Shown piece after piece: positions 10,560-64,000 of a stretch of 64,000 nt of DNA; the first letter of the stretch is position 1; every line of letters begins with the position of its first letter. The notes below the pieces were generated by a model. It had not been told where the DNA came from, searched no databases, and saw only the letters and a list, made by a program, of their open reading frames with translations. Both the position numbers and the translations under genes were made by a program. The stretch is from positions 124,001 through 188,000 of the IMG/VR virus record IMGVR_UViG_3300036944_001289. One strand, written 5' to 3'.

Positions 10560-11330
10560 ATGAATGATATACTTTCAATATCCGACGATAAAGCATTCTA
10601 TACGCTTGAAGGAGAAGGTCGCTTTGTAGGTCAACCATCAGTTTTCTTGAGGTTGGCAATGTGTAATTTAACGTGTAAAGGGTTTGCATCTGAAGACTCA
10701 CCACACGGTTGTGATTCTTATATCTCTTGGTCAATTAAGAATCGTTTCTCATACGAAGATCTAAACAAATACTTTAGTGATAATGGTTTTGTAGAAAAGT
10801 TAAAAGAAGGTGCAATCTTAAAGTTAACTGGTGGAGAACCATTTCTACAACAGAAAAGACTATATGAATGGGTTGTACAATTCAAGAAGACATTTGGATT
10901 TAGAGAGACCTATCTTGGTGATGAACCTATTCTAAAGATAGACTTTGAAACAAACGGTACTATTTTACCGGATGATAAATGGTCAAGCGTTTTAAACGCT
11001 ACATTTACTACATCACCTAAAATGTCAAATAACGGTGATGAAGAGAAACTAAGATACAAACCAGAAGTACTAAAGTATCTCATTTCAAAAAATGCATGCT
11101 TTAAGTTTGTAATTAACAACCAATCTGATCTAGATGAACTGTATACAAAGTATATCCTCTCTACGGATGTTCTACTACCTAAAGATCTTATCTGGTTAAT
11201 GCCTTGTTGTGGTTCTCGTAAAGAACATGAGTTAAAAGCACCAATGGTTGCAGAGTTATGTAAGGAACATGGATTTAATTTCAGTCCAAGATTGCATTTA
11301 ATTCTTTGGAACCAAGCTTTACGTGTATAA
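10560..11330 (+). CDS. queE: 7-carboxy-7-deazaguanine synthase (radical SAM)
   Basis: YTLEGEG, VFLRL, CNLTC-x11-CDS, TGGEP, ETNGT, SPK, FKFV, PRLH motifs. Confidence 0.9.
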   Translation: MNDILSISDDKAFYTLEGEGRFVGQPSVFLRLAMCNLTCKGFASEDSPHGCDSYISWSIKNRFSYEDLNKYFSDNGFVEKLKEGAILKLTGGEPFLQQKRLYEWVVQFKKTFGFRETYLGDEPILKIDFETNGTILPDDKWSSVLNATFTTSPKMSNNGDEEKLRYKPEVLKYLISKNACFKFVINNQSDLDELYTKYILSTDVLLPKDLIWLMPCCGSRKEHELKAPMVAELCKEHGFNFSPRLHLILWNQALRV

Positions 11331-14093: not shown

Positions 14094-14434
14094 TTGGTAG
14101 CACTAAGCATTATTGCGTAGTTTGCACCATTTATTCTTATTTTTATATAGTGTGTAGAACTTGTTAAAACAGCAGAAGTCGTAGTTTGCCCGTAAAAAGT
14201 TGAAGATAACGACGATATATTCAACGTATTAGTAGTAACAGCCGAGGACAACGACAATATATCTGATGAGTTGCTACTAATAGTAGACGCAAACGTGACA
14301 TTATCTAAACCTACTATAAAATCTTTAAAATCTAGACGTCTGGTCTCAATACCATTATCTACTATCAGATAATCTCCATTAATAATTTCATTTGTTACAG
14401 GTAACTGATTGATACCTATGTTTACGGTTGACAT
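14090..14434 (-). CDS. small fibre/appendage-like structural protein
   Basis: Start re-called; INQLP...DYLIVD N-module, S/T-rich body, YIKIRING.NYAI C-terminus. Confidence 0.55.
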   Translation of the reverse strand: MSTVNIGINQLPVTNEIINGDYLIVDNGIETRRLDFKDFIVGLDNVTFASTISSNSSDILSLSSAVTTNTLNISSLSSTFYGQTTTSAVLTSSTHYIKIRINGANYAIMLSATN

Positions 14435-14460
14435 ATATAAAATATTTAATATAATACTAT

Positions 14461-15243
14461 ATGAATAAAATAGGTGTAGCTGTAATAACTTGTAATAGAC
14501 GAGCATTATTCAGTGTTTGTTTAGATTCTCTAAAGAAATGTTCATACGATGAATTGATCGTAATCAACGATGGCGCACCTATTAACGATAATTTTGATTG
14601 CGAGATAATAAACAACGAAAAAAACTTAGGTGTTGGTTTATCTAAAAATAAAGCAATGTCAATTCTTTTATCAAGAAACTGTGATTTTCTATTTATCATT
14701 GAAGATGATATGATTATAAAAGATAAAGATATACTTCAAAAATATATACACGCACATAATGTTACCGGTTTACATCACTTTATGTTTGCATATCATGGTT
14801 ATGCAAATAAAGATTATAATACCAAATCTGCTAAACCTAGAGTTATCATAGATTATGATAACGTAAAGGTATCACTAAATAGACATTGTGTTGGTGCTTT
14901 CTGTTTTTATACCAAATCTTCATTACAGGATGTCGGGTTAAACGACGATAAGTTCTATAATGCTTTCGAACATGTAGATCACTCTTTTAGATTAGCTAAG
15001 AAAGGTTATAGTACACCTTATTGGTGGTGGGCTGATATAGCAAATAGCTTAGATTTAATTGATGAGCAGTGTGCACCTGATGTTAACTCATCTATAAGAC
15101 ATAAACCAGACTGGGAAAAAACAATGAATAACTCTATGAAGTATTTTATGGAGAAACACAAAACCTCACCTCTACATGTACCAGACGCAAGTACAGAGGA
15201 AGTAGTAAATTTTCTTAAAAAAATTAAAGTAAAAAATGCATAA
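14461..15243 (+). CDS. GT2-family glycosyltransferase
   Basis: AVITCNR, VINDG, NLGVG..KN, IIEDD, GLND.KF..AFEHVD. Confidence 0.9.
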   Translation: MNKIGVAVITCNRRALFSVCLDSLKKCSYDELIVINDGAPINDNFDCEIINNEKNLGVGLSKNKAMSILLSRNCDFLFIIEDDMIIKDKDILQKYIHAHNVTGLHHFMFAYHGYANKDYNTKSAKPRVIIDYDNVKVSLNRHCVGAFCFYTKSSLQDVGLNDDKFYNAFEHVDHSFRLAKKGYSTPYWWWADIANSLDLIDEQCAPDVNSSIRHKPDWEKTMNNSMKYFMEKHKTSPLHVPDASTEEVVNFLKKIKVKNA

Positions 15244-28163: not shown

Positions 28164-28391
28164 CTACTTTTTCTTCTTCTTTCTAGGTAATCTGAATGTT
28201 ACTGTAGATATAGATGGATTTAGTCTATCACCTTTAAATCCACTGTACGCAGAGGGTGTAGACTTATTACCAATAAGAGGGTTCACAGTACCATGATTAG
28301 GCATATTAGGAACCTTTACAGGTCTTTTTGTATCTATAGGTGCTCTAAAACCACCCTCCAATAGAAATTTAACTAATTTATTGAACCCCAT
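28164..28391 (-). CDS. small basic late protein
   Basis: TAAATA 5 nt upstream; MGFNKLVKFLLE leader; RKKKKK tail. Confidence 0.55.
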   Translation of the reverse strand: MGFNKLVKFLLEGGFRAPIDTKRPVKVPNMPNHGTVNPLIGNKSTPSAYSGFKGDRLNPSISTVTFRLPRKKKKK

Positions 28392-28414
28392 ATTATTATT
28401 TATATAATAACAGA

Positions 28415-28777
28415 ATGACTAAAACTAAAACTTTAACCTGCGTAGTTACAGGAAGTACTACTGTTTACTCAGGTGAATTCCTTGCAAAGAAAATTGAAGA
28501 GTATGGTTCTGAAGAAAACTTAGAAAAACGATATATTTGTAAAGAAGTAAAAAGCTTTCTTAAAAAGAGATATAAGATTAAAGATATTAGAAAAGTATTA
28601 TCTGTGGATGATAAGATACCACTACCTGATAATGAAACTCTGGTCTTTTTAGAAATGAATTTTAATAGCAGTATTAATACTGAGAACTCAGCATCTACAA
28701 CAATAACAGAATTTACATACAATAAGTCAGATAAAGATGTTGAAGAATTTATCAACAAGTATATAATTCAAAAATGA
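28415..28777 (+). CDS. hypothetical protein
   Basis: 120 aa; TTGAAC-N16-TATAAT promoter 6 nt upstream. Confidence 0.6.
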   Translation: MTKTKTLTCVVTGSTTVYSGEFLAKKIEEYGSEENLEKRYICKEVKSFLKKRYKIKDIRKVLSVDDKIPLPDNETLVFLEMNFNSSINTENSASTTITEFTYNKSDKDVEEFINKYIIQK

Positions 28778-36585: not shown

Positions 36586-37151
36586 TAATAACATTTACAG
36601 GTACACAATCAGTAGGTAAAAGTACTTTGCTTTCAGCTCTTCAAAAAGATGAAAGATATAAAGACTGGATGTTTGAACCGGAAATAACGCGTAGTCTAAA
36701 AGAGAAGTTTGGACTGAATATAAATGAATCAGGTGATTCAATAACGCAGTTATTCGTTCTAAATTCGCATTTAGAAAATGTAGTAAAACATAAGAACAAT
36801 AATGTTATTTTAGATAGATGTATAGTTGATGGGCTTGTATATACAACATATCAGTATATGACAGGTAAGATTCATACAGATGTATTTTTGCATGCAAAGT
36901 ATATGTTCGATCTTATTATAGATAAATATGATATAATATTTCATATTGAGCCTGAATTTCCTGTTGTTGATGATGGTGTAAGAAGTATAGATGAAAAGTT
37001 TAGAACAACTATAGCTTCATTGATAAACGAAGCCTTACAATCTAATAGTGTAGTTAGAACTAAGATAGTAAAGTTAACAGGTACTGTAGAAGAAAGATTG
37101 AAACAAATAGATATAGCTATTGAAAACTTAAAAGCACAAAATATAATATAA
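36582..37151 (+). CDS. P-loop nucleotide kinase/ATPase (AAA_28-like), copy 2
   Basis: FTGTQSVGKST, DRCIVDG, YDIIF, DDGVR. Confidence 0.8.
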   Translation: MIITFTGTQSVGKSTLLSALQKDERYKDWMFEPEITRSLKEKFGLNINESGDSITQLFVLNSHLENVVKHKNNNVILDRCIVDGLVYTTYQYMTGKIHTDVFLHAKYMFDLIIDKYDIIFHIEPEFPVVDDGVRSIDEKFRTTIASLINEALQSNSVVRTKIVKLTGTVEERLKQIDIAIENLKAQNII

Positions 37152-37153
37152 AC

Positions 37154-38074
37154 ATGGCACTTAAAAAACTCGACAATAAAAACATAAGCAAGCACCTTGG
37201 TAAGGTATCACAATACAAATCAACATATGATGCTTCTCTCTTGGTAAGAGAGCCAAGATCATCTAATAGAGTACATCTTAATATTAAAGATGATAACTTA
37301 CCCTTTGTAGGTTATGATACTTGGAATGCATATGAAGTTAGTGCATTAACAGATAGTGGTTTACCTGTTGCAGGTGTAGCTAAAATTGTTTACCCTGCTT
37401 CAAGCAAATATATCGTAGAATCAAAGTCTATTAAACTTTACTTTAATTCTTTTAATATGACTAAACTAGGGTTTCATAGCGATGCAGTTCTTGATAAAAT
37501 AGCAATTACTGCTTCAGAAGATCTCTCAAAACTACTCGAAACAGATGTACAAGTTTACGTACATTCGAATGCTGAAGTACTACGTCAACAAAGCACTGCA
37601 TATACCGAATGGAATCACAAAAAATACTCAACAATAGAGGATGAGTATAATGTTAATGATGTAACCTTTGAAATCTATAAGGAAACACCAGAACTACTAC
37701 AAGTAGTAGATAGTGTTAACGATACAGTTCACTATCATAGTGCTCTACTTAAGAGTAATTGTAGAGTAACATCACAACCAGACTGGGGTGATGTATATAT
37801 AACCATCACAAAAAAAGATAAAACTATTGACCCTATCTCTTTACTAAAGTATATAATATCATTTAGAGATGAGTGCCACTTTCATGAAGAGATATGTGAG
37901 ACAATTTATAAACGCATATATGATAAGCTAACACCTGATGAACTTACGGTAAGATGTTTGTATGCACGTAGGGGTGGTATTGATATAAACCCTGAGCGTG
38001 CAAATAAAGAGGTATTATTAAGTACTAATCTACAACTTAATTGTATACCACATATTAAAACACCTAAGCAATAA
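37154..38074 (+). CDS. queF: NADPH-dependent preQ0 reductase (bimodular QueF)
   Basis: WNAYEVS, IVESKSIKLYFNSF, LKSNCRVTSQPDWG (catalytic Cys), FHEEICE, YARRGGIDINP. Confidence 0.95.
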   Translation: MALKKLDNKNISKHLGKVSQYKSTYDASLLVREPRSSNRVHLNIKDDNLPFVGYDTWNAYEVSALTDSGLPVAGVAKIVYPASSKYIVESKSIKLYFNSFNMTKLGFHSDAVLDKIAITASEDLSKLLETDVQVYVHSNAEVLRQQSTAYTEWNHKKYSTIEDEYNVNDVTFEIYKETPELLQVVDSVNDTVHYHSALLKSNCRVTSQPDWGDVYITITKKDKTIDPISLLKYIISFRDECHFHEEICETIYKRIYDKLTPDELTVRCLYARRGGIDINPERANKEVLLSTNLQLNCIPHIKTPKQ

Positions 38075-39885: not shown

Positions 39886-41340
39886 TTAGAAGTAAACTGA
39901 CTGATTGCCAGGTGTGAATGCCTGACCGAGTCCGCTTACTATAATAACGTGGTAGTAGAGGTTTGCGCCGAAAATGTTGTCTACAACACCGTAACGGGTT
40001 AATAGACCAACACGTGGTGCAAAGTCGTTCTGACCAATGGTGCGTTGTACCATAACAGGTATGTATGGGCAGTAGATGATACCGGTATCGTAGAATTCTG
40101 GACCCTTGTAGCCAAGTAGTGCATATTCTGGACGATTTGTAGTATCAACGTATTGACCTTCTGTTCTGGTGTCTCTGTAAACCTGGAAACGACCACCAAG
40201 GCTACCTACCTTAGCAACACCGACTGGCTGTGTGTTAACATTGCCTTGAACTGGTACCCATTGGAATTCAGGTAGCATTTCAAGGATTGCGCAAACGCGA
40301 GGTGTTGCAACAATGAAGTTTGCAGCGCCACGACGATTACGTACAGCAATACGGTTAGCTTCGATAATTAGTCTTTGATAGAAGTCACGGTTACGTTCGA
40401 CCAACCAACGGCCATCTGCTGAAGCAGGAGACCAGATAGAATAACCAACGCCAGCACCTGCATTGAGGGCGACTTGGATCATTCTAATAATCATTTCACG
40501 GTCGATTTCGGCCTGAATTTCATAGCTCATAGCGTTTGTTAATTCAGTGTCGATATCAATACCGTTCATGTTCTTGAGGTCTTGCTCAAGCTCTACGGAC
40601 CAGCGGGCGCCTAAGCGTCTTGTACCAGCTTCAACAGCAGTCTTTTCAAATGAAACTTCAAATGTCGGAATGTTTTCCGAGATTTCAAAGCTTGATAGAA
40701 GAGCTGCTACACCGTTATTTTGACCGTTATTAATAAAATTAACGGGCAATGCAGAGCTACCAGAAAGGTAGGCTGCGGATGTACCGGTGTAAGCACTGTT
40801 AAGGTACTGATAGCCTGCTTCCTGACCAGCTGCAGAGGTAAGAATACCAGACTGACCGGCAGGAGCGTTGCCATTAGAACCTAAAGTGCTACCTGTGTAG
40901 CGATAACGAAGAGCGAATGCGAGACCTACTGGACCAGCCATTGGTTGAACGCCGACAATTTCGTTAGAGATAAGCTCTGGGAAAGTACGGCGGATCATGG
41001 GGATCAAGATTTTTGGAAGACGGTAGTCACCAGGTGCGTATGTATCTGTACCAGGTGTACCGGTAGAGTTCCATGAGTTCATACCTGCTGTGCCACCAAC
41101 TGCACCACCGAAACCGGCAGTATTAACTGTACCGGATGGGTTGTAGTTAGGACCAGCTTCGTTAACCATACACCATTGCTCTTGGTTTTCCAATAGCATT
41201 GCTGTATTTAAACGGGTGTGGTTGTCTTCAATCGGAGCAACGTTCTTAGAAGAGTAATCCAAAACTGGACCCCACTTCTCAAGAAGCGCCTTTGCTCTTG
41301 ATTCATTGATATATGCTTGTGTAGGACGAATAGTGTTCAT
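39886..41340 (-). CDS. major capsid protein gp23
   Basis: LLEKW.PVL, TA.LLENQ, VGVQPMAGPVGLAFALR, RRL.ARWSVELEQDLK, EIDRE, YCPYIP, TRYG. Confidence 0.97.
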   Translation of the reverse strand: MNTIRPTQAYINESRAKALLEKWGPVLDYSSKNVAPIEDNHTRLNTAMLLENQEQWCMVNEAGPNYNPSGTVNTAGFGGAVGGTAGMNSWNSTGTPGTDTYAPGDYRLPKILIPMIRRTFPELISNEIVGVQPMAGPVGLAFALRYRYTGSTLGSNGNAPAGQSGILTSAAGQEAGYQYLNSAYTGTSAAYLSGSSALPVNFINNGQNNGVAALLSSFEISENIPTFEVSFEKTAVEAGTRRLGARWSVELEQDLKNMNGIDIDTELTNAMSYEIQAEIDREMIIRMIQVALNAGAGVGYSIWSPASADGRWLVERNRDFYQRLIIEANRIAVRNRRGAANFIVATPRVCAILEMLPEFQWVPVQGNVNTQPVGVAKVGSLGGRFQVYRDTRTEGQYVDTTNRPEYALLGYKGPEFYDTGIIYCPYIPVMVQRTIGQNDFAPRVGLLTRYGVVDNIFGANLYYHVIIVSGLGQAFTPGNQSVYF

Positions 41341-58005: not shown

Positions 58006-58554
58006 TTATGAATTTAAGTCATCTAAGATATCTAAGTCTTCTTTATCATATTGCTTAGTTAGCTGTTTAAATTCATTTGGTGTTAGTTCTTTACCATCTA
58101 TATAGTACTCTTCTTCTATTTTATCACCATTTTGATTCCACACTTGACTAGCAGGACCATCTAAGCGATGAAGCTTGCTATCTTTATACCATTCTTCACT
58201 TCGCCTTTTACCATTTTTATGCCATGATTGATAAGCAGGTCTATCTAACCTATAACGTTTATTATCTCTAAACCATTCTTCAATATGTTTTTGACCATCT
58301 ATATACCACAGTTGAACAGCAGGACCATCTAAGCGATGAAGCTTGCTATTCTTAAACCACTCTTCAAATTCTTTTTGACCATTTTTATACCACCATTGAC
58401 GAGCAGGACCATCTAATCTATGAAATTCACCATCTTTAAGCCATTCTTCAGACTTAAGCTTTGTATCATCCTCATCCCAATACGTATGTATAACTTTAAT
58501 ATCTTGGTAATCTTCAATATTCTCTACTAATAAAATCAATTGATCAAACTTCAT
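58006..58554 (-). CDS. LHRLDGPA-repeat protein (4 x 28 aa) with shared C-terminal tag
   Basis: 84-bp repeat units; MKFDQLILLVE leader. Confidence 0.85.
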   Translation of the reverse strand: MKFDQLILLVENIEDYQDIKVIHTYWDEDDTKLKSEEWLKDGEFHRLDGPARQWWYKNGQKEFEEWFKNSKLHRLDGPAVQLWYIDGQKHIEEWFRDNKRYRLDRPAYQSWHKNGKRRSEEWYKDSKLHRLDGPASQVWNQNGDKIEEEYYIDGKELTPNEFKQLTKQYDKEDLDILDDLNS

Positions 58555-58562
58555 AAGATTAT

Positions 58563-59186
58563 TTATGAATTTAAGTTATCTAATATATCCATATCTTCTT
58601 TATCGTATTGCTTAGTTAGTTGTTTAAGCTCATTTGGTGGTATTTCTTTACCGTTTATATAGTACTCTTCAATCATCTTTTGACCATCTTCATCCCACTC
58701 TTGACTAGCAGGACCATCTAAGCGATGAAGCTTGCTATCTTTATACCATTCTTCAAATTCTTTTTGACCATTTTTATACCAATCTTGACGAGCAGGTCCA
58801 TCTAAGCGATGAGGTCTACCATCTATATAGTACTCTTCAATCATCTTTTGACCATTTGTATACCAGTATTGACGAGCAGGTCCATCTAATCTATGAAATT
58901 CATCATCTCTAAACCATTCTTCAATATATTTTTGACCATCTATATACCACAGTTGAACAGCAGGACCATCTAAGCGATGAAGCTTGTTATCTTTATACCA
59001 TTCTTCAAATTCTTTTTGACCATTTTTATACCACCCTTGACGAGCAGGACAATCTAATCTATGAGGTTTACCATCTTTATACCAATACTCCTCCTTAGGT
59101 TTTGTCTCAGCATCATCCCAGTACACTCTTTCAACTCGAATATTTTCATTATCTTCTGCTAATAAAACTAAATCTTTAAACTTCAT
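58563..59186 (-). CDS. LHRLDGPA-repeat protein (5 x 28 aa) with shared C-terminal tag
   Basis: 84-bp repeat units; MKFKDLVLLAE leader. Confidence 0.85.
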   Translation of the reverse strand: MKFKDLVLLAEDNENIRVERVYWDDAETKPKEEYWYKDGKPHRLDCPARQGWYKNGQKEFEEWYKDNKLHRLDGPAVQLWYIDGQKYIEEWFRDDEFHRLDGPARQYWYTNGQKMIEEYYIDGRPHRLDGPARQDWYKNGQKEFEEWYKDSKLHRLDGPASQEWDEDGQKMIEEYYINGKEIPPNELKQLTKQYDKEDMDILDNLNS

Positions 59187-59341
59187 AAGATTATTTATAA
59201 GAAAACCTCTCTTTATATTTTTACGCCGCCCAAAAATTCCCGAAAGGCGTAATACTATCTATATTACCGAAAGTTCCGGGCCCTATATAGCGTTTCTATT
59301 TTTCTGCGCGCGTCGCGAGAATTTCCGAGGGTTCCGAGCTT

Positions 59342-59436
59342 TTTATGGTTCCGAGCGCTCTCTGCGGCGAATATAGAATTTCCCGCGACTTTTGCGGCGA
59401 GAATAGCGCTATTTATGGTTCCGAGCGCTCTCTGCG
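59342..59436. repeat. 25-bp direct repeat TTTATGGTTCCGAGCGCTCTCTGCG x2 (70-bp period) in a GC-rich patch
   Basis: Copies at 59342-59366 and 59412-59436. Confidence 0.9.
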
Positions 59437-59837
59437 CAGAGAATTGGGCATGGGGCTCATTATACGAAAGTTCCTTTAACTAATAAGTGAAAACTCCTTT
59501 GCCCTGGTCTCTGAAACCTTTTTATATGAAAACCTTTTTTGAACTAGAGGTTCCGACTTTTCCGAAAAAAGTTATCTGCGATATAACCACTATCTTTTCT
59601 GAAAAGGTTCCTTTTATGCAGCCAAAGGAACATCTATATAATTAATGTAACTATTTATTATGAAGCGACAACCATTAGCTTATCCGAAATGTATAATATG
59701 AAATATTCTTTTAGGAGTTATATATCAAAGCTTTTCTGAAATGTATAATATGAAGATAGTATATAGCAGTTTCTGAAAAGTATAATATGAAGACCAATTA
59801 AGGCTACAAATAATATGCAGCCCTAATAAGTGCTAAC

Positions 59838-60032
59838 TTATCCTTTATTACATTCTTCCCAACAAGTTAGCTCATCCTCGTTTTCTAATATTAATACCAG
59901 ATCTTTTAAGTCATCAATTAGTTGTTGCAAATCTATTTTATCTTTAATGGCGTCTTCCTTTAATAGAGGATGCCCTTTAACAGGTTCTTTTTCTAGATAT
60001 TTCTTTGCAAGTTCTAAATGTTTATTTGTCAT
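59838..60032 (-). CDS. small early-type protein
   Basis: 64 aa; GGAAC-N5-TATACT upstream (60053-60068). Confidence 0.55.
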   Translation of the reverse strand: MTNKHLELAKKYLEKEPVKGHPLLKEDAIKDKIDLQQLIDDLKDLVLILENEDELTCWEECNKG

Positions 60033-60269
60033 AATAATTAGGGTGCATAATAAGTATATACTTGTTCCATCCTATAAAGTGAAACATTATTATATGAAAC
60101 CATTATTTAATACCGTTTCAGAAACGCTCTTATATGCAAAAGAGGTGATCAACCGTTTCAGAAAAGTATTATATGAAATATGTACTAGAGCGGTTTCTGA
60201 AAGCTACAAGAGGATATCAGATCAACAAACTTTTCAGAAATAAACGGATTTGAAAAATGAGTGAGAAAA

Positions 60270-60306
60270 TAATAGTAGGCTGCTTATATTAAGCAGCCTA
60301 CTATTA
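60270..60306. terminator. hairpin terminator downstream of the 60319 ORF
   Basis: TAATAGTAGGCTGCTTA-tat-TAAGCAGCCTACTATTA. Confidence 0.75.
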
Positions 60307-60318
60307 TGCTAATTACTT

Positions 60319-60681
60319 TTAGTCAATGCTGGGTTCTGAATCTTCGTCATCCGAATCCATATCTTCATCTTCTACATCCTCCACCATATCATTCTTCTTA
60401 ACCTTACCTGCCGCAATCAAACGACGCGCTTCCTTTTGCGCCTCCTTAAACTCTTCATACTTAGCCTTGCGACGAGCCTCCTTTTCCTCAGCCTCAATCT
60501 TATTCTTAGCTTCCGCTGCCAATTCCATCTCTTCCATATGCTGAATGGCCGCATCCAAAATTGCGGTCATCGTATCTTTTTCCGTCAAGTTAAGCTTCTT
60601 GCGGATTTCGATAATGCGATTCTTATCGGCTTCATGGAGTAGAGCTGCGGTGAACTTGGCTGGCACTTTTAGGGTCTTCAT
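60319..60681 (-). CDS. RHH-like DNA-binding protein with coiled coil and acidic tail
   Basis: beta-strand then two helices (KFTAALLHEADKNRIIEIRKKLNLTEKDTMTAILDAAI); visibly higher GC than the bulk genome. Confidence 0.5.
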   Translation of the reverse strand: MKTLKVPAKFTAALLHEADKNRIIEIRKKLNLTEKDTMTAILDAAIQHMEEMELAAEAKNKIEAEEKEARRKAKYEEFKEAQKEARRLIAAGKVKKNDMVEDVEDEDMDSDDEDSEPSID

Positions 60682-61196
60682 TTTAGTAGTTAGTTTGTTG
60701 TTGTTGTTAATAAGGGCTCTATCGGCCCTACATTTATATTACTAAAGTTCCGTTGTAAGAGTTGAAGGAGGATCCGAGGAAAAATAAGTCCTAAGCTTTT
60801 CAGAAAAGTAAAAAATGCAAGCCGCACTTTTCTGAAAAAATAGAATACACCTTTCATACCTGACTTTTCTGAAAAGCTTTGAATGCTGCTTCCAATTCGT
60901 AAACCACTTTTCGAGGAACTTTGATATTATAAAGTTTAAGGGTCTATATTTTTCCTGTATACTATTTCAGTTCCTGCGTTTCGTACGCATTAAAATGCAA
61001 GGCTTTATATGATACTAATATAAAAGAAGCTTACAAGTACGCAGGAACAAGTACTTGTGCCTAGTAAGCAGGAACTGGAACAGAGTACTATATAGCCGTA
61101 CTAAGAATCGGAACAATAAGAAAGGAGAGCCGCATAAAGCAGACTCTCCTTGTTCCTATATACTAGCTAACTAAAACTGTTCCTAGATACTATTGA

Positions 61197-61379
61197 TTAC
61201 TTACTAATCTTATCATCGACCTTATTTGAGAAGTATAGCATGATATAACCGAATACTGCCATCTTAATGATTACTAGTACTTGCATTACTAGAGTAGTTT
61301 GTTGCTTGAATGTAGCTCCTTCTAAGATAGCCAGTATTAGAAAGAATAGTGTTAGTAGTAGATTGATAGCTGTACGCAT
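61197..61379 (-). CDS. small two-TM membrane protein
   Basis: Two hydrophobic helices in 60 aa. Confidence 0.5.
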   Translation of the reverse strand: MRTAINLLLTLFFLILAILEGATFKQQTTLVMQVLVIIKMAVFGYIMLYFSNKVDDKISK

Positions 61380-61439
61380 ATAGTATGATCTAATATGTAT
61401 ATGAGGTTCTTATATCCAAGAATAACAATGTGTTTCGGG

Positions 61440-61469
61440 GCTCTCAGAGCGCTGTTTGTCTCTGAGAGC
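61440..61469. other. GC-rich hairpin without U-tract
   Basis: GCTCTCAGAG-N10-CTCTGAGAGC. Confidence 0.6.
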
Positions 61470-61510
61470 TGGGCGGGGCTATGATATCAGTGAGTGGGTT
61501 CTGTGAATGG

Positions 61511-62047
61511 TTAACTCATCTCGTCTAACCAGTTTTTGTAATAGGCTCTACCAGCTTTTGCTGCATTTGGACCACCTATAAATAGTGTTAACCCACCTGA
61601 ACCTACTACGAAACGTGGACCTCCACTTTGTTTATACAAAATCTCAGTGCAAGCCAAAATTGTAAGCTTACCACTAGCAATTGAATTAAAGAATGATAAT
61701 GGATCATCCACGAGTGTGATGTCTTTTGTTTTGAATACTCCTTTAGCAATAGCATCTTCGATAGTTAATTTAGCCTCGTCTGCATCTGGACCTGGTTTAC
61801 CAGTGTCGACGAATTCATAAGGCATATGTAGCATAAGGTCTTCAAACCCATAATTAGTGTAGATGTCTGAATTATTATCTTCTGGTAAAATTATAAAACA
61901 GGTTGGATCATCACCAAGACTATCATAGTTATCTTCGCACCTTACTACCGCGTTAGCTACTTTTGTTCCGTAGTCCTCGTCGGTGTTCTCTTTATAGATA
62001 GAAGCATAAGCTTCTGAAATTAACTTATAATCATGTTTGTCTTTCAT
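61511..62047 (-). CDS. acidic late protein
   Basis: TAAATA 5 nt upstream; KLISEAY...YKE leader. Confidence 0.65.
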   Translation of the reverse strand: MKDKHDYKLISEAYASIYKENTDEDYGTKVANAVVRCEDNYDSLGDDPTCFIILPEDNNSDIYTNYGFEDLMLHMPYEFVDTGKPGPDADEAKLTIEDAIAKGVFKTKDITLVDDPLSFFNSIASGKLTILACTEILYKQSGGPRFVVGSGGLTLFIGGPNAAKAGRAYYKNWLDEMS

Positions 62048-62244
62048 AGGTATATTTATTTATTCAGCGCTGCTCATAGATTTGAGAATCTTAGCTTGGG
62101 CTTCGAATTCTCTCTTGAAGCAGCATTATTTTTGTTTATATTTTGTTAGCATTCTGACATTTCTATGATCTCCCATACCTCTCTTGTAAATCCCTCTCCC
62201 ATCCTCCTATAACCTTCCGGTGCCGCATTAGGTTTTTCGTTAAT

Positions 62245-62463
62245 TTAACTATGATTTTTAACTATTTTATTAACGTATTCCTTAGCTTCCTTATTACTTA
62301 CCCCTACTAATACAGGTGTTTGATATAGAGGCTCTCCTACATATTCATATACTGTATATGTATTAAGAGCTACTTGCTTATTCTTCATCCATTGCTTTGT
62401 TACCGGGTTTTGTTCACTCACCCATTTATAGTCTTGTTCGATATGGAAGCTTTGATCGTTCAT
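62245..62463 (-). CDS. small hypothetical protein
   Basis: 72 aa in an early-type cluster. Confidence 0.5.
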   Translation of the reverse strand: MNDQSFHIEQDYKWVSEQNPVTKQWMKNKQVALNTYTVYEYVGEPLYQTPVLVGVSNKEAKEYVNKIVKNHS

Positions 62464-62474
62464 ATGAGTAATAA

Positions 62475-62867
62475 TTAAAATATACCATCACAGAAGCCTT
62501 GCTCAATACCATTAACAATTTCCAATACCTTAGCCTTATCTGGACCTGCTACAAACAATGCACCATCTACGCAAGTTGCATCTATATACTCTCCTTCTTC
62601 ATCTACCTCATTTGGCGCCGTATAAAGTGCTACATAACCTGTCTTTGCTAACTTCTGGAAGTTAAGCATATTTGCTACTACAGTAACATTCTTAAGTTCT
62701 TTTACCCGTCCCTTAATATAATCCATATGATCTTTATACATATCCATCTCATCTGGATTACTTGTGCGTAAAGCATCCGAAACCTCTTTAATGTTGCTAA
62801 TAAAAGGACCAGGATCAGAGACTTCATGACCTTCATCACCGCCTAGGACTACTTTATAGATATTCAT
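62475..62867 (-). CDS. hypothetical protein
   Basis: 130 aa; GGAAC-N5-TATAAT at 62905-62920. Confidence 0.6.
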   Translation of the reverse strand: MNIYKVVLGGDEGHEVSDPGPFISNIKEVSDALRTSNPDEMDMYKDHMDYIKGRVKELKNVTVVANMLNFQKLAKTGYVALYTAPNEVDEEGEYIDATCVDGALFVAGPDKAKVLEIVNGIEQGFCDGIF

Positions 62868-62940
62868 AATGTTTTAGATGTTATTTGTTTTACTGTGCAC
62901 TATAATTATATGTTTGTTCCGAGGGCTAACTAATTACTAA

Positions 62941-63189
62941 TTAAGCTTCCAAGTCAATATAAATCTCATCACCATTCTCATCCATAATAAGCTTACTAAG
63001 CTTATGATCTTTACCCACACCCCAATCACTCAGCTCATCAATAATACGCTGCACAGTGATAAGAGTCTTATCATTGTCGCCGAAACTAAAACTGTTACTT
63101 TCGCAGATGAAGTCGTATTGCTCATCACTGATATACTTTTCATCATACAAGGCACTTAGCTCTAAGATAGGTGTATATGTTGGTTTCAC
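62941..63189 (-). CDS. small acidic protein
   Basis: Start re-called at GTG 63189, 6 nt after GGAAC-N5-TATTAT. Confidence 0.55.
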   Translation of the reverse strand: MKPTYTPILELSALYDEKYISDEQYDFICESNSFSFGDNDKTLITVQRIIDELSDWGVGKDHKLSKLIMDENGDEIYIDLEA

Positions 63190-63217
63190 GTTATTATAAT
63201 ATATTTGTTCCCTTTGC

Positions 63218-63400
63218 TTACTCTTCTTCGTCTTTGAAAAGTGCTTCAAGATACTCTCGATCCTGAGCTTTATCAAAAGCTTCATTGACAGATTTTACAA
63301 ACTCTTTAAGCTGTTCAATAGTGTCTACATTATGTAGCGCTTCGCTTAAGTTATCCTTTGCGCACTCAATATAGGTTTCTTGTTTTTCTTTTTGAGTCAT
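63218..63400 (-). CDS. small acidic protein
   Basis: 60 aa; GGAAC-N5-TAATAT 6 nt upstream. Confidence 0.55.
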   Translation of the reverse strand: MTQKEKQETYIECAKDNLSEALHNVDTIEQLKEFVKSVNEAFDKAQDREYLEALFKDEEE

Positions 63401-63431
63401 ACCAATATATTATATTGGTTCCCGGGGCTTA

Positions 63432-63842
63432 CTATTGGCGTATCCCGTTTTTATATACAATTAGTTTTTTATTTGGATTATCTAATATAATATCCATTAC
63501 ATGATTAGTAATTACTTGTTCTGTATATGTAATTATTACACCGTTACTAAACATATTATTAAACCATTTATAGTACTTTGAACTTTCGAGTATAACAACA
63601 TAGTCTACAATATCAAAGGTAAGTATAAATACATTGTTATCTATACTCTTAAAAGCCAACCAATCTACTTCATCTGGGTCGAACTGTCCTTTACTTTGTA
63701 GATTGTCTATATAGTATTGAAAGATACCATCTGATATCTCTTCTGGTGTATGTCTATTTTCTAGCTGATCTAGACGTGTATTAAAAAAGTGCTCAAGACT
63801 TGTAGTTGTTCTTATAACACATATTATAGCCTTGTTATTCAT
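63432..63842 (-). CDS. hypothetical protein
   Basis: 136 aa ORF. Confidence 0.55.
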   Translation of the reverse strand: MNNKAIICVIRTTTSLEHFFNTRLDQLENRHTPEEISDGIFQYYIDNLQSKGQFDPDEVDWLAFKSIDNNVFILTFDIVDYVVILESSKYYKWFNNMFSNGVIITYTEQVITNHVMDIILDNPNKKLIVYKNGIRQ

Positions 63843-64000
63843 TTTATACGTTCTCCATCTCTATATACAATAAGCTCAGTATTATTACTATCATGTATAA
63901 GCTTTAATATGTGTTCGTATATATCAATCCAATCGGTATTACTACTCACCATTTTCATGATTTTATAGTACTTAGATGTATCAGGAATAATATATACATC

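What the first reader, a model, noticed from the sequence alone, without database searches (positions are those of the whole stretch)
59262..63422. Unusual early-promoter-like motif GGAAC-N5-TAWWHT confined to the right end
Seen: GGAAC followed 5 nt later by a -10-like hexamer upstream of the ORFs starting at 60032 (TATACT), 60681 (TAATAT), 62867 (TATAAT), 63189 (TATTAT) and 63400 (TAATAT), and without an ORF at about 59470 (minus), 59627 (plus), 60915 (plus) and 60970 (minus). No TTGACA-type -35 is evident. GGAAC resembles ECF -35 boxes, but the spacing is far too short. Inference: an extended -10 class read by an unusual host sigma or a phage or packaged factor, forming a third promoter class here.
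Basis: partly seen in the sequence, partly recalled or inferred. Interest (0 to 1): 0.6.

Follow-up and report, generated by a model that had tools for sequence, protein, structure and literature searches.

The report
Phage promoter class lacking a −35 box
An uncultured 209-kb T4-like phage places the box GGAAC exactly five bases upstream of a TAnnAT −10 hexamer in front of its early-type genes and tRNAs; this looks like a real promoter class that works without a −35 box, but what reads GGAAC is still unknown.

Summary
GGAAC-N5-TAWWHT occurs 8 times in the window against 0.97 expected, and all 8 lie in 59459-63422. It is not confined to that end. The window is part of a 209,282-bp circularly assembled T4-like phage. 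GGAAC-N5-TAnnAT occurs 33 times genome-wide against about 1.6 expected, and 30 copies are on the minus strand. Thirty-two lie in the non-coding hub and the adjoining ~75-kb minus-strand block of ORFans, tRNAs and metabolic genes. The 5-base spacing is strict, and single-base variants of GGAAC stay at background. There is no −35 box and no TGn. In 14 of 33 sites a start codon lies 6-10 nt after the hexamer, which implies leaderless mRNAs. Three sites without an ORF precede tRNA genes. In relatives with about 57% identical primase, the box and hexamer are kept in an orthologous promoter while the spacer drifts. In those relatives GGAAC also sits in the same register inside canonical TTGACT-N17-TATAAT promoters. 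More distant complete relatives lack the motif. The best reading is a −35-independent promoter class for host σ70-type RNA polymerase, with GGAAC at −22 to −18. That position matches the Z-element and plays the role of the T4 MotA box. Transcription starts could not be mapped, and no factor that reads GGAAC was found.

The parts
59261..59277 (-). Near-site GGAAC-N6-TAATAT, with a spacing of 6 instead of 5. It marks the left edge of the finding.
   Evidence: Read directly. It is not counted among the 33 strict sites.
59459..59474 (-). GGAACTTTCGTATAAT, a promoter-like site with no ORF downstream. It faces a GC-rich repeat patch.
   Evidence: The 238 nt downstream do not fold unusually well (z = -1.2).
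59627..59642 (+). GGAACATCTATATAAT, a site with no ORF. It is divergent from the 59474 site and forms a 19-nt inverted repeat with it. It points into the TTTCWGAAA/TATAATATGAA repeat array.
   Evidence: inverted repeat I14.
60053..60068 (-). GGAACAAGTATATACT, 21 nt upstream of the ATG of ORF 59838-60032 (64 aa, ORFan).
60736..60751 (-). GGAACTTTAGTAATAT, 55 nt upstream of ORF 60319-60681. A small stem-loop at 60713-60729 lies in the leader.
60319..60681 (-). ORF of 120 aa driven by the 60751 site. It may be a ribbon-helix-helix DNA-binding protein with an acidic tail. This is a lead only.
   Evidence: No Pfam or PHROG hit. The nearest named Atlas clusters are all RHH families, at scores of 0.84-0.86. 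Sequence.
60915..60930 (+). GGAACTTTGATATTAT, a site with no ORF. It is divergent from the 60751 site and convergent with the 60974 site. A strongly folding stretch (60937-61160) lies downstream.
   Evidence: (inverted repeat I10; z = -4.9).
60959..60974 (-). GGAACTGAAATAGTAT, the ninth site. It fits TAnnAT but not TAWWHT.
62905..62920 (-). GGAACAAACATATAAT, 38 nt upstream of ORF 62475-62867 (130 aa, ORFan).
63196..63211 (-). GGAACAAATATATTAT with a GTG start at 63189, 7 nt after the last T. The ORF is 62941-63189 (82 aa). A leaderless arrangement is inferred.
63407..63422 (-). GGAACCAATATAATAT with the ATG at 63400, 7 nt after the last T. The ORF is 63218-63400 (60 aa). The motif takes up 16 nt of the 31-nt intergenic gap.
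59596..60874 (.). Non-coding hub that surrounds the sites lacking an ORF. It holds 10 of the genome's 12 TTTCWGAAA palindromes. Five of them are fused to TATWATATGAA on the + strand. A perfect 18-bp hairpin lies at 60269-60307.
   Evidence: No Rfam family matches.

Best explanation
GGAAC-N5-TAnnAT is a genuine promoter class of an uncultured T4-like phage that relies on the host RNA polymerase. TAnnAT is an ordinary sigma70-family -10 hexamer at -12 to -7. GGAAC is a fixed proximal box at -22 to -18, one helical turn upstream, and it takes the place of the -35 box. The class drives the ORFan-rich hyperplastic block, tRNA clusters and metabolic genes in this phage. In relatives it drives replication genes. 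Transcripts often begin at or next to the start codon, so they are leaderless. I judge it most likely that GGAAC is read by a dedicated sequence-specific reader docked on the holoenzyme. This would be a phage-encoded or virion-delivered factor acting like T4 MotA but placed about 10 bp closer to the -10 hexamer, rather than by bare host polymerase. What is shown: the existence, strict geometry, strand and position bias, and conservation of the motif. The confidence of 0.45 applies to the whole statement including the dedicated reader. I rate the promoter-class part alone at about 0.8.
For: Enrichment: 8 against 0.97 in the window and 33 against about 1.6 in the genome. Geometry: the spacing is sharply 5, with 29 sites against 0-6 for spacings 0-11. 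Variants GGAAT, GGAAG, GGCAC, GAAAC and the like stay at background, and only GGAAA is mildly raised at 9 against 3.7. Position: 30 of 33 sites are on the strand of the surrounding genes, and 25 of 33 lie outside called ORFs in a genome that is 91% ORF. Start codons lie 6-10 nt after the hexamer in 14 of 33 sites, including GTG starts. The late class (ATAAATA-N5-ATG) and the canonical class show the same architecture. Three sites without an ORF lie 198-368 nt upstream of tRNA genes, which argues against a translation signal. Genes downstream are of early or middle type: PRPP synthase, primase, HNH endonuclease, exonuclease, ATPases and many ORFans. Conservation: in 340 kb of loci from relatives with about 57% primase identity the motif occurs 29 times against 3.8 expected, and 26 of the 30 listed sites are on the gene strand. 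In the promoter of the gp59-like gene, 14 distinct relatives keep AGGAAC (11), GGAAA (2) or GGGAA (1) together with TAnAAT, while the N5 spacer varies, and GTG or ATG follows 5-7 nt later. GGAAC also occurs in the same register inside canonical promoters of gp41 and gp32 (TTGACT-N7-GGAAC-N5-TATAAT), as expected for an additive element. Pointers to a dedicated reader: five near-invariant bases, the strict spacing and a lineage-specific distribution. Complete relatives G001 and G002 have 3 and 6 hits and use TTGA-N17/18-TATAAT instead. Canonical sigma70-type promoters elsewhere in this genome could express such a factor first.
Against: There are no transcript data, because no RNA run was listed. 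No candidate reader was found. There is no second gp55-like sigma, no sigma region 4, and no MotA or AsiA. Three clade-specific small ORFs near the primase gave no family, no PDB relative and only low-confidence helical models. If a phage-made factor is required, the ORFan block would be a middle rather than an immediate-early region, which is unlike T4. The box coincides in position with the Z-element, which core polymerase reads without any factor.
Confidence: 0.45

Rival explanations
1. The promoter class is as described, but host holoenzyme reads it without help. GGAAC would be an unusually strong Z-element-like spacer contact, made by the beta' zipper of core polymerase and/or sigma region 3, that substitutes for the -35 box at promoters with a good -10 hexamer. 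These would then be immediate-early promoters.
For: The Z-element was mapped to -22..-18, 4 bp upstream of the -10 hexamer (AACCT in T7A1, AACAT in T7A2). It can replace the -35 box when the -10 is strong, and it defines '-10/Z' and '-10/Z/-35' promoters (PMC3173786). GGAAC lies 5 bp upstream of the hexamer, shares the AAC core, and occurs both without a -35 box (this phage) and with one (relatives). A phage without its own polymerase needs promoters that unmodified host polymerase can use, and the ORFan block has almost no other kind. No phage factor was detected. Different hosts could explain the patchy distribution among relatives.
Against: The published Z-element is loose, with single substitutions changing activity less than 2-fold. 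Here all five bases are near-invariant and one-mismatch variants are at background. The register is offset by 1 bp. No bacterial genome among 206 searched shows an excess of the motif over the reversed control, although these are unlikely to include the host.
Confidence: 0.3
2. An alternative sigma factor reads the whole 16-bp element. This could be a host ECF-like sigma or an undetected, highly diverged phage sigma.
For: GGAAC is the classic -35 motif of ECF sigmas (from my own knowledge). The GG...-N5-T geometry equals that of sigma54 promoters, TGGCAC-N5-TTGC (from my own knowledge). The phage does encode one small sigma, which is gp55-like (PHROG late sigma, E = 7.7e-28).
Against: ECF promoters need a 16-17 nt spacer, and here the spacer is 5. 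No conserved bases lie 16-17 nt downstream of GGAAC. A sigma54-type start would fall 3-4 nt inside the ORFs. TAnnAT is a group-1-type -10 hexamer. No second sigma region 2 or region 4 hit and no gp55 paralogue was found. GGAAC coexists in register with canonical TTGACT -35 boxes in relatives.
Confidence: 0.1
3. GGAAC is not an activating promoter element. It could be an operator for a shut-off repressor overlapping -10-only promoters, or an RNA-level signal for processing or translation.
For: GGAAC sits in the spacer of promoters that already have consensus -35 and -10 boxes. Repressors often bind there. A possible RHH protein is encoded in the hub. GTTCC-containing repeats without a -10 hexamer cluster at 59273-59611.
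Against: An operator or RNA signal would not need a spacing fixed to the base in more than 30 sites. The distance to the start codon varies from 6 to more than 100 nt, and three sites precede tRNA genes, which rules out a translation signal. Most copies without a -10 hexamer belong to a different repeat, GGTTCCGAGC.
Confidence: 0.08

Closest known systems
T4 middle promoters (MotA box plus -10; sigma appropriation by MotA/AsiA)
   Same: Both belong to a T4-type phage that depends on host polymerase. Both have a good sigma70 -10 hexamer plus a phage-specific upstream box replacing the -35 box. Both number in the tens per genome and sit in front of replication, recombination and tRNA genes. Hybrids carrying a -35 box exist in both (PMC2988021).
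   Different: The MotA box, (a/t)3TGCTTtA, is centred at -30, lies 12 +/- 1 bp from the -10 hexamer and tolerates mismatches. GGAAC is centred at -20, lies exactly 5 bp from the hexamer and tolerates almost none. No MotA or AsiA homologue is present.
Z-element / '-10/Z' promoters read by the beta' zipper (Yuzenkova et al. 2011)
   Same: Both are 5-bp spacer elements at about -22..-18. Both can stand in for the -35 box at promoters with a strong -10 hexamer. Both also occur together with a -35 box. Both share an AAC core.
   Different: The Z-element consensus is loose and its effects are modest. GGAAC is sharply defined. The register is shifted by 1 bp. Dependence on the zipper is untested here.
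Extended -10 (TGn) promoters
   Same: Both are -35-independent, with an extra element just upstream of the -10 hexamer.
   Different: TG at -15/-14 is present in only 1 of 33 sites. The box lies 3-8 bp further upstream.
ECF sigma promoters (sigmaE / EcfG type, -35 GGAAC)
   Same: The pentamer is identical.
   Different: The spacing to the downstream element is 5 rather than 16-17, and the downstream element is TAnnAT rather than a CGT-type -10.
PeSLs (promoter-early stem-loops) of T4-like hyperplastic regions
   Same: Both are a repeated promoter motif scattered through an ORFan-rich hyperplastic block of a T4-like genome (PMC4122927).
   Different: PeSLs combine a terminator stem-loop with a canonical early promoter. 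Only 2 of 33 GGAAC sites have a strong hairpin just upstream, and there is no -35 box.

Membership tests
Canonical sigma70 promoter | TTGACA-like -35 box 16-18 bp upstream of the -10 hexamer | tested here: not met
   Only 1 of 33 sites has TTG at that spacing. Positions -37 to -23 carry no information.
Canonical sigma70 promoter | TAnnnT -10 hexamer with the start about 7 nt downstream | tested here: inconclusive
   The hexamers are TAAAAT x10, TATAAT x5 and TACAAT x5 among others. Start codons 6-10 nt downstream in 14 of 33 sites fit this, but no transcription start data exist.
Extended -10 promoter | TGn at -15 to -13 | tested here: not met
   1 of 33 sites.
Z-element (-10/Z) promoter | Spacer element at -22..-18 that substitutes for the -35 box | tested here: inconclusive
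   The position matches within 1 bp, and both forms (without and with a -35 box) are seen. Function was not tested.
Z-element (-10/Z) promoter | Dependence on the beta' zipper of core polymerase | not testable with these tools
   This needs in vitro transcription with zipper mutants.
T4 middle promoter | MotA box TGCTTtA 12 +/- 1 bp upstream of the -10 hexamer | tested here: not met
   The only enriched upstream pentamer is GGAAC at N5.
T4 middle promoter | MotA and AsiA genes in the phage | tested here: not met
   PF09158 and PF09010 gave no hit at E <= 10.
T4 late promoter | TATAAATA-type element read by gp55 | tested here: not met
   The late class is present separately: ATAAATA lies in front of 55 ORFs and a gp55-like sigma is encoded. 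GGAAC sites carry TAnnAT, not ATAAATA.
ECF sigma promoter | -35 GGAAC followed 16-17 nt later by a CGT-type -10 | tested here: not met
   No conservation at that distance. The spacing to the only conserved element is 5.
Sigma54 promoter | GG at -24 and GC at -12 | tested here: not met
   GG-N8-TA has the same geometry, but TA replaces GC, and the implied start would lie inside the ORFs.
PeSL | Terminator stem-loop joined to the promoter | tested here: not met
   2 of 33 sites are below the 5th percentile of background folding energy.

The most novel reading that the evidence does not exclude
A sub-clade of uncultured T4-like phages re-targets host RNA polymerase with a so-far unknown factor. 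The factor would read GGAAC one helical turn upstream of the -10 hexamer and so create a MotA/AsiA-independent form of promoter appropriation. If no factor exists, these would be the first natural promoters in which a high-information Z-element-like box fully replaces the -35 box.
Probability: 0.35. Interest if true: 0.75.

Novelty: new variant of a known kind. Interest (0 to 1): 0.55.

Why it matters
Phage promoter classes that bypass the −35 box have repeatedly shown how RNA polymerase can be re-wired. Examples are MotA/AsiA and gp55/gp33/gp45 in T4, and gp39 in phage P23-45. This case offers a compact 16-bp element with very sharp specificity at a position (−22 to −18) where only the loosely defined Z-element is known. 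It is conserved across a widespread environmental phage clade, so it is a ready-made test case. One outcome would be a new polymerase-docking specificity factor. The other would be sequence-specific reading of the promoter spacer by core polymerase or sigma. In practical terms, the motif, together with the late ATAAATA-N5-ATG and the canonical promoters, gives a three-class transcription map for annotating these uncultured genomes. It also indicates that their hosts translate leaderless mRNAs efficiently.

Tried and rejected
- **Transcript evidence.** No RNA sequencing run was listed for 58500-64000, so no reads were laid.
- **Close DNA relatives.** There is none in the phage collection.
- **Relatives of the early block.**
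  - The 178-aa ORFan found only a fragment of the same phage, G006.
  - The phrog_850 protein found nothing.
  - The hub repeat pattern found only the same phage.
  - PRPP synthase in metagenome contigs gave only 26-27% identical hits.
- **Host identification.**
  - MCP relatives sit in MAGs of inconsistent taxonomy.
  - Those 5 MAGs, and 201 genomes of one of their phyla, show no excess of the motif over the reversed control.
  - This says nothing about the true host.
- **Reader of GGAAC.**
  - No RNA polymerase beta subunit was found. The T7-type polymerase search was uninformative because its control did not ring.
  - No second gp55-like sigma, no sigma region 4_2, no MotA and no AsiA were found.
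  - Three small ORFs co-distributed with the motif (genome 92443-92853, 93217-93564, 103260-103646) have no Pfam, PHROG or PDB relatives.
  - AlphaFold models of two of them were low-confidence helical bundles or coiled coils (pLDDT 63-64). I did not run fold searches on them.
- **Other readings considered and dropped.**
  - The conserved GGAAA...TACAAT upstream of the 80-aa ORF in relatives lies inside the upstream ORF's coding sequence, so I dropped it as evidence.
  - 7-deazaguanine DNA modification as a recognition cue: QueC and QueF are present but there is no TGT/DpdA hit.
  - PeSL-type stem-loops are not present.
  - No Rfam family matches the region.
  - The 'GGAAC-only' copies at 59273-59611 mostly belong to a separate repeat, GGTTCCGAGC. 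They do not support a free-standing GGAAC-binding protein.

Full report
**What the sequence is.**
- The window is bases 124001-188000 of a 209,282-bp IMG/VR virus record with 32% G+C. A 118-nt terminal overlap indicates a circular assembly.
- PHROG scans identify a T4-type major capsid protein, a portal protein, gp43-like DNA polymerase, gp41-like helicase, gp61-like primase, gp47-like nuclease and a gp55-like late sigma factor (E = 7.7e-28).
- The capsid protein is only about 34% identical to that of cultured T4-like cyanophages. More than 600 IMG/VR contigs carry capsids 70-82% identical to it. This is therefore a deep-branching, environmentally common, uncultured T4-like lineage.
- I found no multisubunit RNA polymerase. 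The T7-type polymerase search was uninformative because its control did not ring. Like T4, the phage evidently relies on host polymerase.

**The observation.**
- GGAAC-N5-TAWWHT occurs 8 times in the window against 0.97 expected. None of 100 shuffles reached 8. All 8 lie in 59459-63422.

**Genome-wide picture.**
- GGAAC-N5-TAnnAT gives 33 hits against about 1.6 in Markov simulations.
- The spacing is sharply 5, with 29 hits against 0-6 for every other spacing from 0 to 11.
- One-base variants of GGAAC at that spacing are at background. The exception is GGAAA, at 9 against 3.7.
- An unbiased scan of every pentamer at every spacing upstream of TAnnAT puts GGAAC-N5 far ahead, at z = 22.
- The sixth base is A or T in 31 of 33 sites. 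The hexamers are TAAAAT (10), TATAAT (5), TACAAT (5), TATTAT (4) and others.
- There is no TG at -15/-14 (1 of 33) and no -35 box (1 of 33). Nothing is conserved further upstream.

**Where the sites are.**
- Thirty of 33 are on the minus strand.
- Thirty-two of 33 lie between genome 183.4 kb and, across the assembly junction, 51 kb. That stretch comprises the non-coding hub plus an adjoining ~75-kb block of minus-strand genes. So 'confined to the right end' is an effect of where the window stops.
- Twenty-five of 33 lie outside called ORFs, in a genome that is 91% ORF.
- The block is a typical T4-like hyperplastic region. It holds:
  - mostly ORFans;
  - PRPP synthase, a phrog_850 RNA-binding protein, ATPases and an exonuclease;
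  - HNH and GIY-YIG endonucleases, a NIF-like phosphatase and an ATP-grasp protein;
  - 27 tRNA genes.
- Three sites without an ORF (genome 45157, 198161, 199247) lie 198, 233 and 368 nt upstream of tRNA-Tyr, tRNA-Leu and tRNA-Met. That fits a promoter and does not fit a translation signal.

**Start codons.**
- In 14 of 33 sites an ATG or GTG that opens an ORF of at least 40 codons lies 6-10 nt after the last T of the hexamer. The remaining ORFs start 20-107 nt away.
- With the hexamer at -12 to -7, the first base of the start codon falls at or next to +1. This means leaderless mRNAs, which is an inference.
- The other two classes show the same architecture:
  - ATAAATA lies in front of 55 ORFs, 26 of them with exactly 5 nt to the ATG.
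  - Canonical TTGAnn-N16-TATAAT-N5/6-ATG promoters lie in the plus-strand block at window 10-38 kb.

**Conservation.**
- Two complete relatives with 74-76% capsid identity (G001, G002) keep the late motif and are enriched for TTGA-N17/18-TATAAT. They lack the GGAAC class, with 3 and 6 hits.
- Primase-based searching found a closer set: three contigs at 92% identity and about 25 contigs at about 57% identity.
- In the 340 kb of loci from the ~57% clade, the motif occurs 29 times against 3.8 expected. Twenty-six of the 30 listed sites are on the gene strand.
- In that clade it sits in front of the gp59-like, gp41-like and gp32-like genes.
- The gp59-like promoter was aligned from 14 distinct relatives. 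It keeps AGGAAC (11), GGAAA (2) or GGGAA (1), plus TAnAAT. The five spacer bases and the flanks vary. GTG or ATG follows 5-7 nt later. This is a phylogenetic footprint in non-coding DNA, because the upstream gene ends at the TAG or TAA just before the box.
- In some relatives GGAAC appears in the same register inside otherwise canonical promoters:
  - gp41: TTGACT-N7-GGAAC-N5-TATAAT.
  - gp32: TTGAAT-N6-GGAAC-N5-TATAAT and TTGACT-N8-GGAAC-N5-TAATAT.
- The box is therefore compatible with, and additive to, a primary-sigma promoter.
- One apparent example, upstream of an 80-aa ORF, was discarded because it lies inside the coding sequence of the preceding ORF.

**Mechanism.**
- The data fit a -35-independent promoter for sigma70-type holoenzyme. 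GGAAC would sit at -22 to -18, one helical turn upstream of the -10 hexamer.
- Two known systems come closest.
  - The Z-element is a 5-bp spacer element at -22..-18, 4 bp upstream of the hexamer (AACCT in T7A1, AACAT in T7A2). The beta' zipper of core polymerase reads it. It can replace the -35 box at strong -10 promoters and it also acts together with a -35 box (PMC3173786). GGAAC overlaps it within 1 bp and shares the AAC core. However, the Z-element is described as loose with effects under 2-fold, whereas GGAAC is nearly invariant.
  - T4 middle promoters pair a good -10 hexamer with a phage-specific MotA box. That box lies 12 +/- 1 bp upstream and is read by MotA on AsiA-remodelled sigma70 (PMC2988021).
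- Several features favour a dedicated reader, and I give that 0.45:
  - the logic resembles that of T4 middle promoters;
  - the same kinds of genes are driven;
  - the distribution is lineage-specific;
  - the box is sharply defined.
- No MotA, AsiA, extra sigma or sigma region 4 was detected, and no candidate emerged.
- Reading by host polymerase alone remains a serious rival at 0.3.
- ECF and sigma54 readings fail on spacing, on the nature of the downstream element and on where the start would fall.
- An operator or an RNA signal is unlikely given the base-exact spacing and the sites upstream of tRNA genes.

**The non-coding hub (59.2-61.2 kb).**
- The four sites without an ORF form two divergent or convergent pairs within inverted repeats.
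- They are embedded in a region with 10 of the genome's 12 TTTCWGAAA palindromes. Five of those are fused to TATWATATGAA on the plus strand.
- The hub also contains a perfect 18-bp hairpin, a GC-rich patch with GGTTCCGAGC repeats, and a 224-nt stretch that folds far better than shuffles (z = -4.9).
- The only sizeable ORF there (60319-60681) is driven by a GGAAC site and may be a ribbon-helix-helix protein, which is a lead only.
- By analogy with the T4 origins that consist of a middle promoter plus an unwinding element (from my own knowledge), the hub could be a regulatory or replication-origin region. I did not test this.

**Limits.**
- No run was listed by the reads tool, so nothing was laid on the sequence.
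- The standard genetic code was used throughout.
- The host is unknown.

Noticed in passing
Genome-wide. In the window, for example, 59192-59198(-) upstream of ORF 58563-59186, and upstream of 39886-41340(-), the major capsid gene.: A T4-type late motif, ATAAATA, precedes 55 ORFs. In 26 of them exactly 5 nt separate it from the ATG, which implies leaderless late mRNAs. Relatives G001 and G002 show the same pattern. The gp55-like late sigma lies just outside the window, at genome 122373-122822(-).
   Followed up: partly
Window 14428-14463(+), 28381-28417(+), 28740-28776(+) and 37120-37156(+).: Canonical TTGAnn-N16-TATAAT promoters with the ATG 4-6 nt after the hexamer lie in the plus-strand block. 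That block encodes glycosyltransferases, ribonucleotide reductase and QueF. All three promoter classes therefore share a leaderless layout, which suggests a host that translates leaderless mRNAs well, including ones with GTG starts.
   Followed up: partly
Window 59596-60874.: Ten of the genome's 12 TTTCWGAAA palindromes cluster here. Five are followed after 2 nt by TATWATATGAA on the + strand. These are promoter-like repeats with an operator-like palindrome at about -23 to -15. They end at a perfect 18-bp hairpin (60269-60307).
   Followed up: partly
Window 60319-60681(-).: This 120-aa ORFan has an acidic tail. Its nearest named protein-atlas clusters are all ribbon-helix-helix families, at scores of 0.84-0.86, which is below the reliable range. 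It may be the protein that binds the hub repeats.
   Followed up: partly
Window 59290-59450.: A GC-rich patch holds a 29-nt direct repeat (59338-59366 and 59408-59436, 97% identical) and four GGTTCCGAGC-type repeats. These account for most GTTCC copies that lack a -10 hexamer.
   Followed up: no
Window 60937-61160(+).: This 224-nt stretch lies downstream of the 60915(+) site, which has no ORF. It folds with z = -4.9 against shuffles. The fold has long-range GCAGGAACTG/CAGTTCCTGC pairing and a terminal GGAACAA...TTGTTCC hairpin. It could be a non-coding RNA or a bidirectional terminator.
   Followed up: partly
L011:17492-19673, L012:376-4944 and L017:7708-10864 (genome 37.5-45 kb and 195.7-198.9 kb).: There are 27 tRNA genes, all on the minus strand inside the block rich in GGAAC sites. 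Three GGAAC sites without an ORF lie 198-368 nt upstream of tRNA genes.
   Followed up: yes
Genome 110536-111288(-); window 37154-38074(+) and 10560-11330(+).: QueC-like, QueF and radical-SAM (QueE-like) genes are present, but no TGT/DpdA hit was found. There is therefore no evidence here for 7-deazaguanine in the phage DNA.
   Followed up: partly
L017:18405-18956(-), L017:15712-16365(-) and L017:13824-14444(+).: A NIF/FCP1-like phosphatase, an R2K-clade ATP-grasp protein and a SegE-like GIY-YIG endonuclease lie among the ORFans of the early block.
   Followed up: no
L119 (G002, 191.8-193.8 kb) and L114 (G002, 86.7-88.1 kb).: Relative G002 carries arrays of a 42-bp tandem repeat (more than 20 copies), presumably coding for a 14-residue protein repeat.
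   Followed up: no
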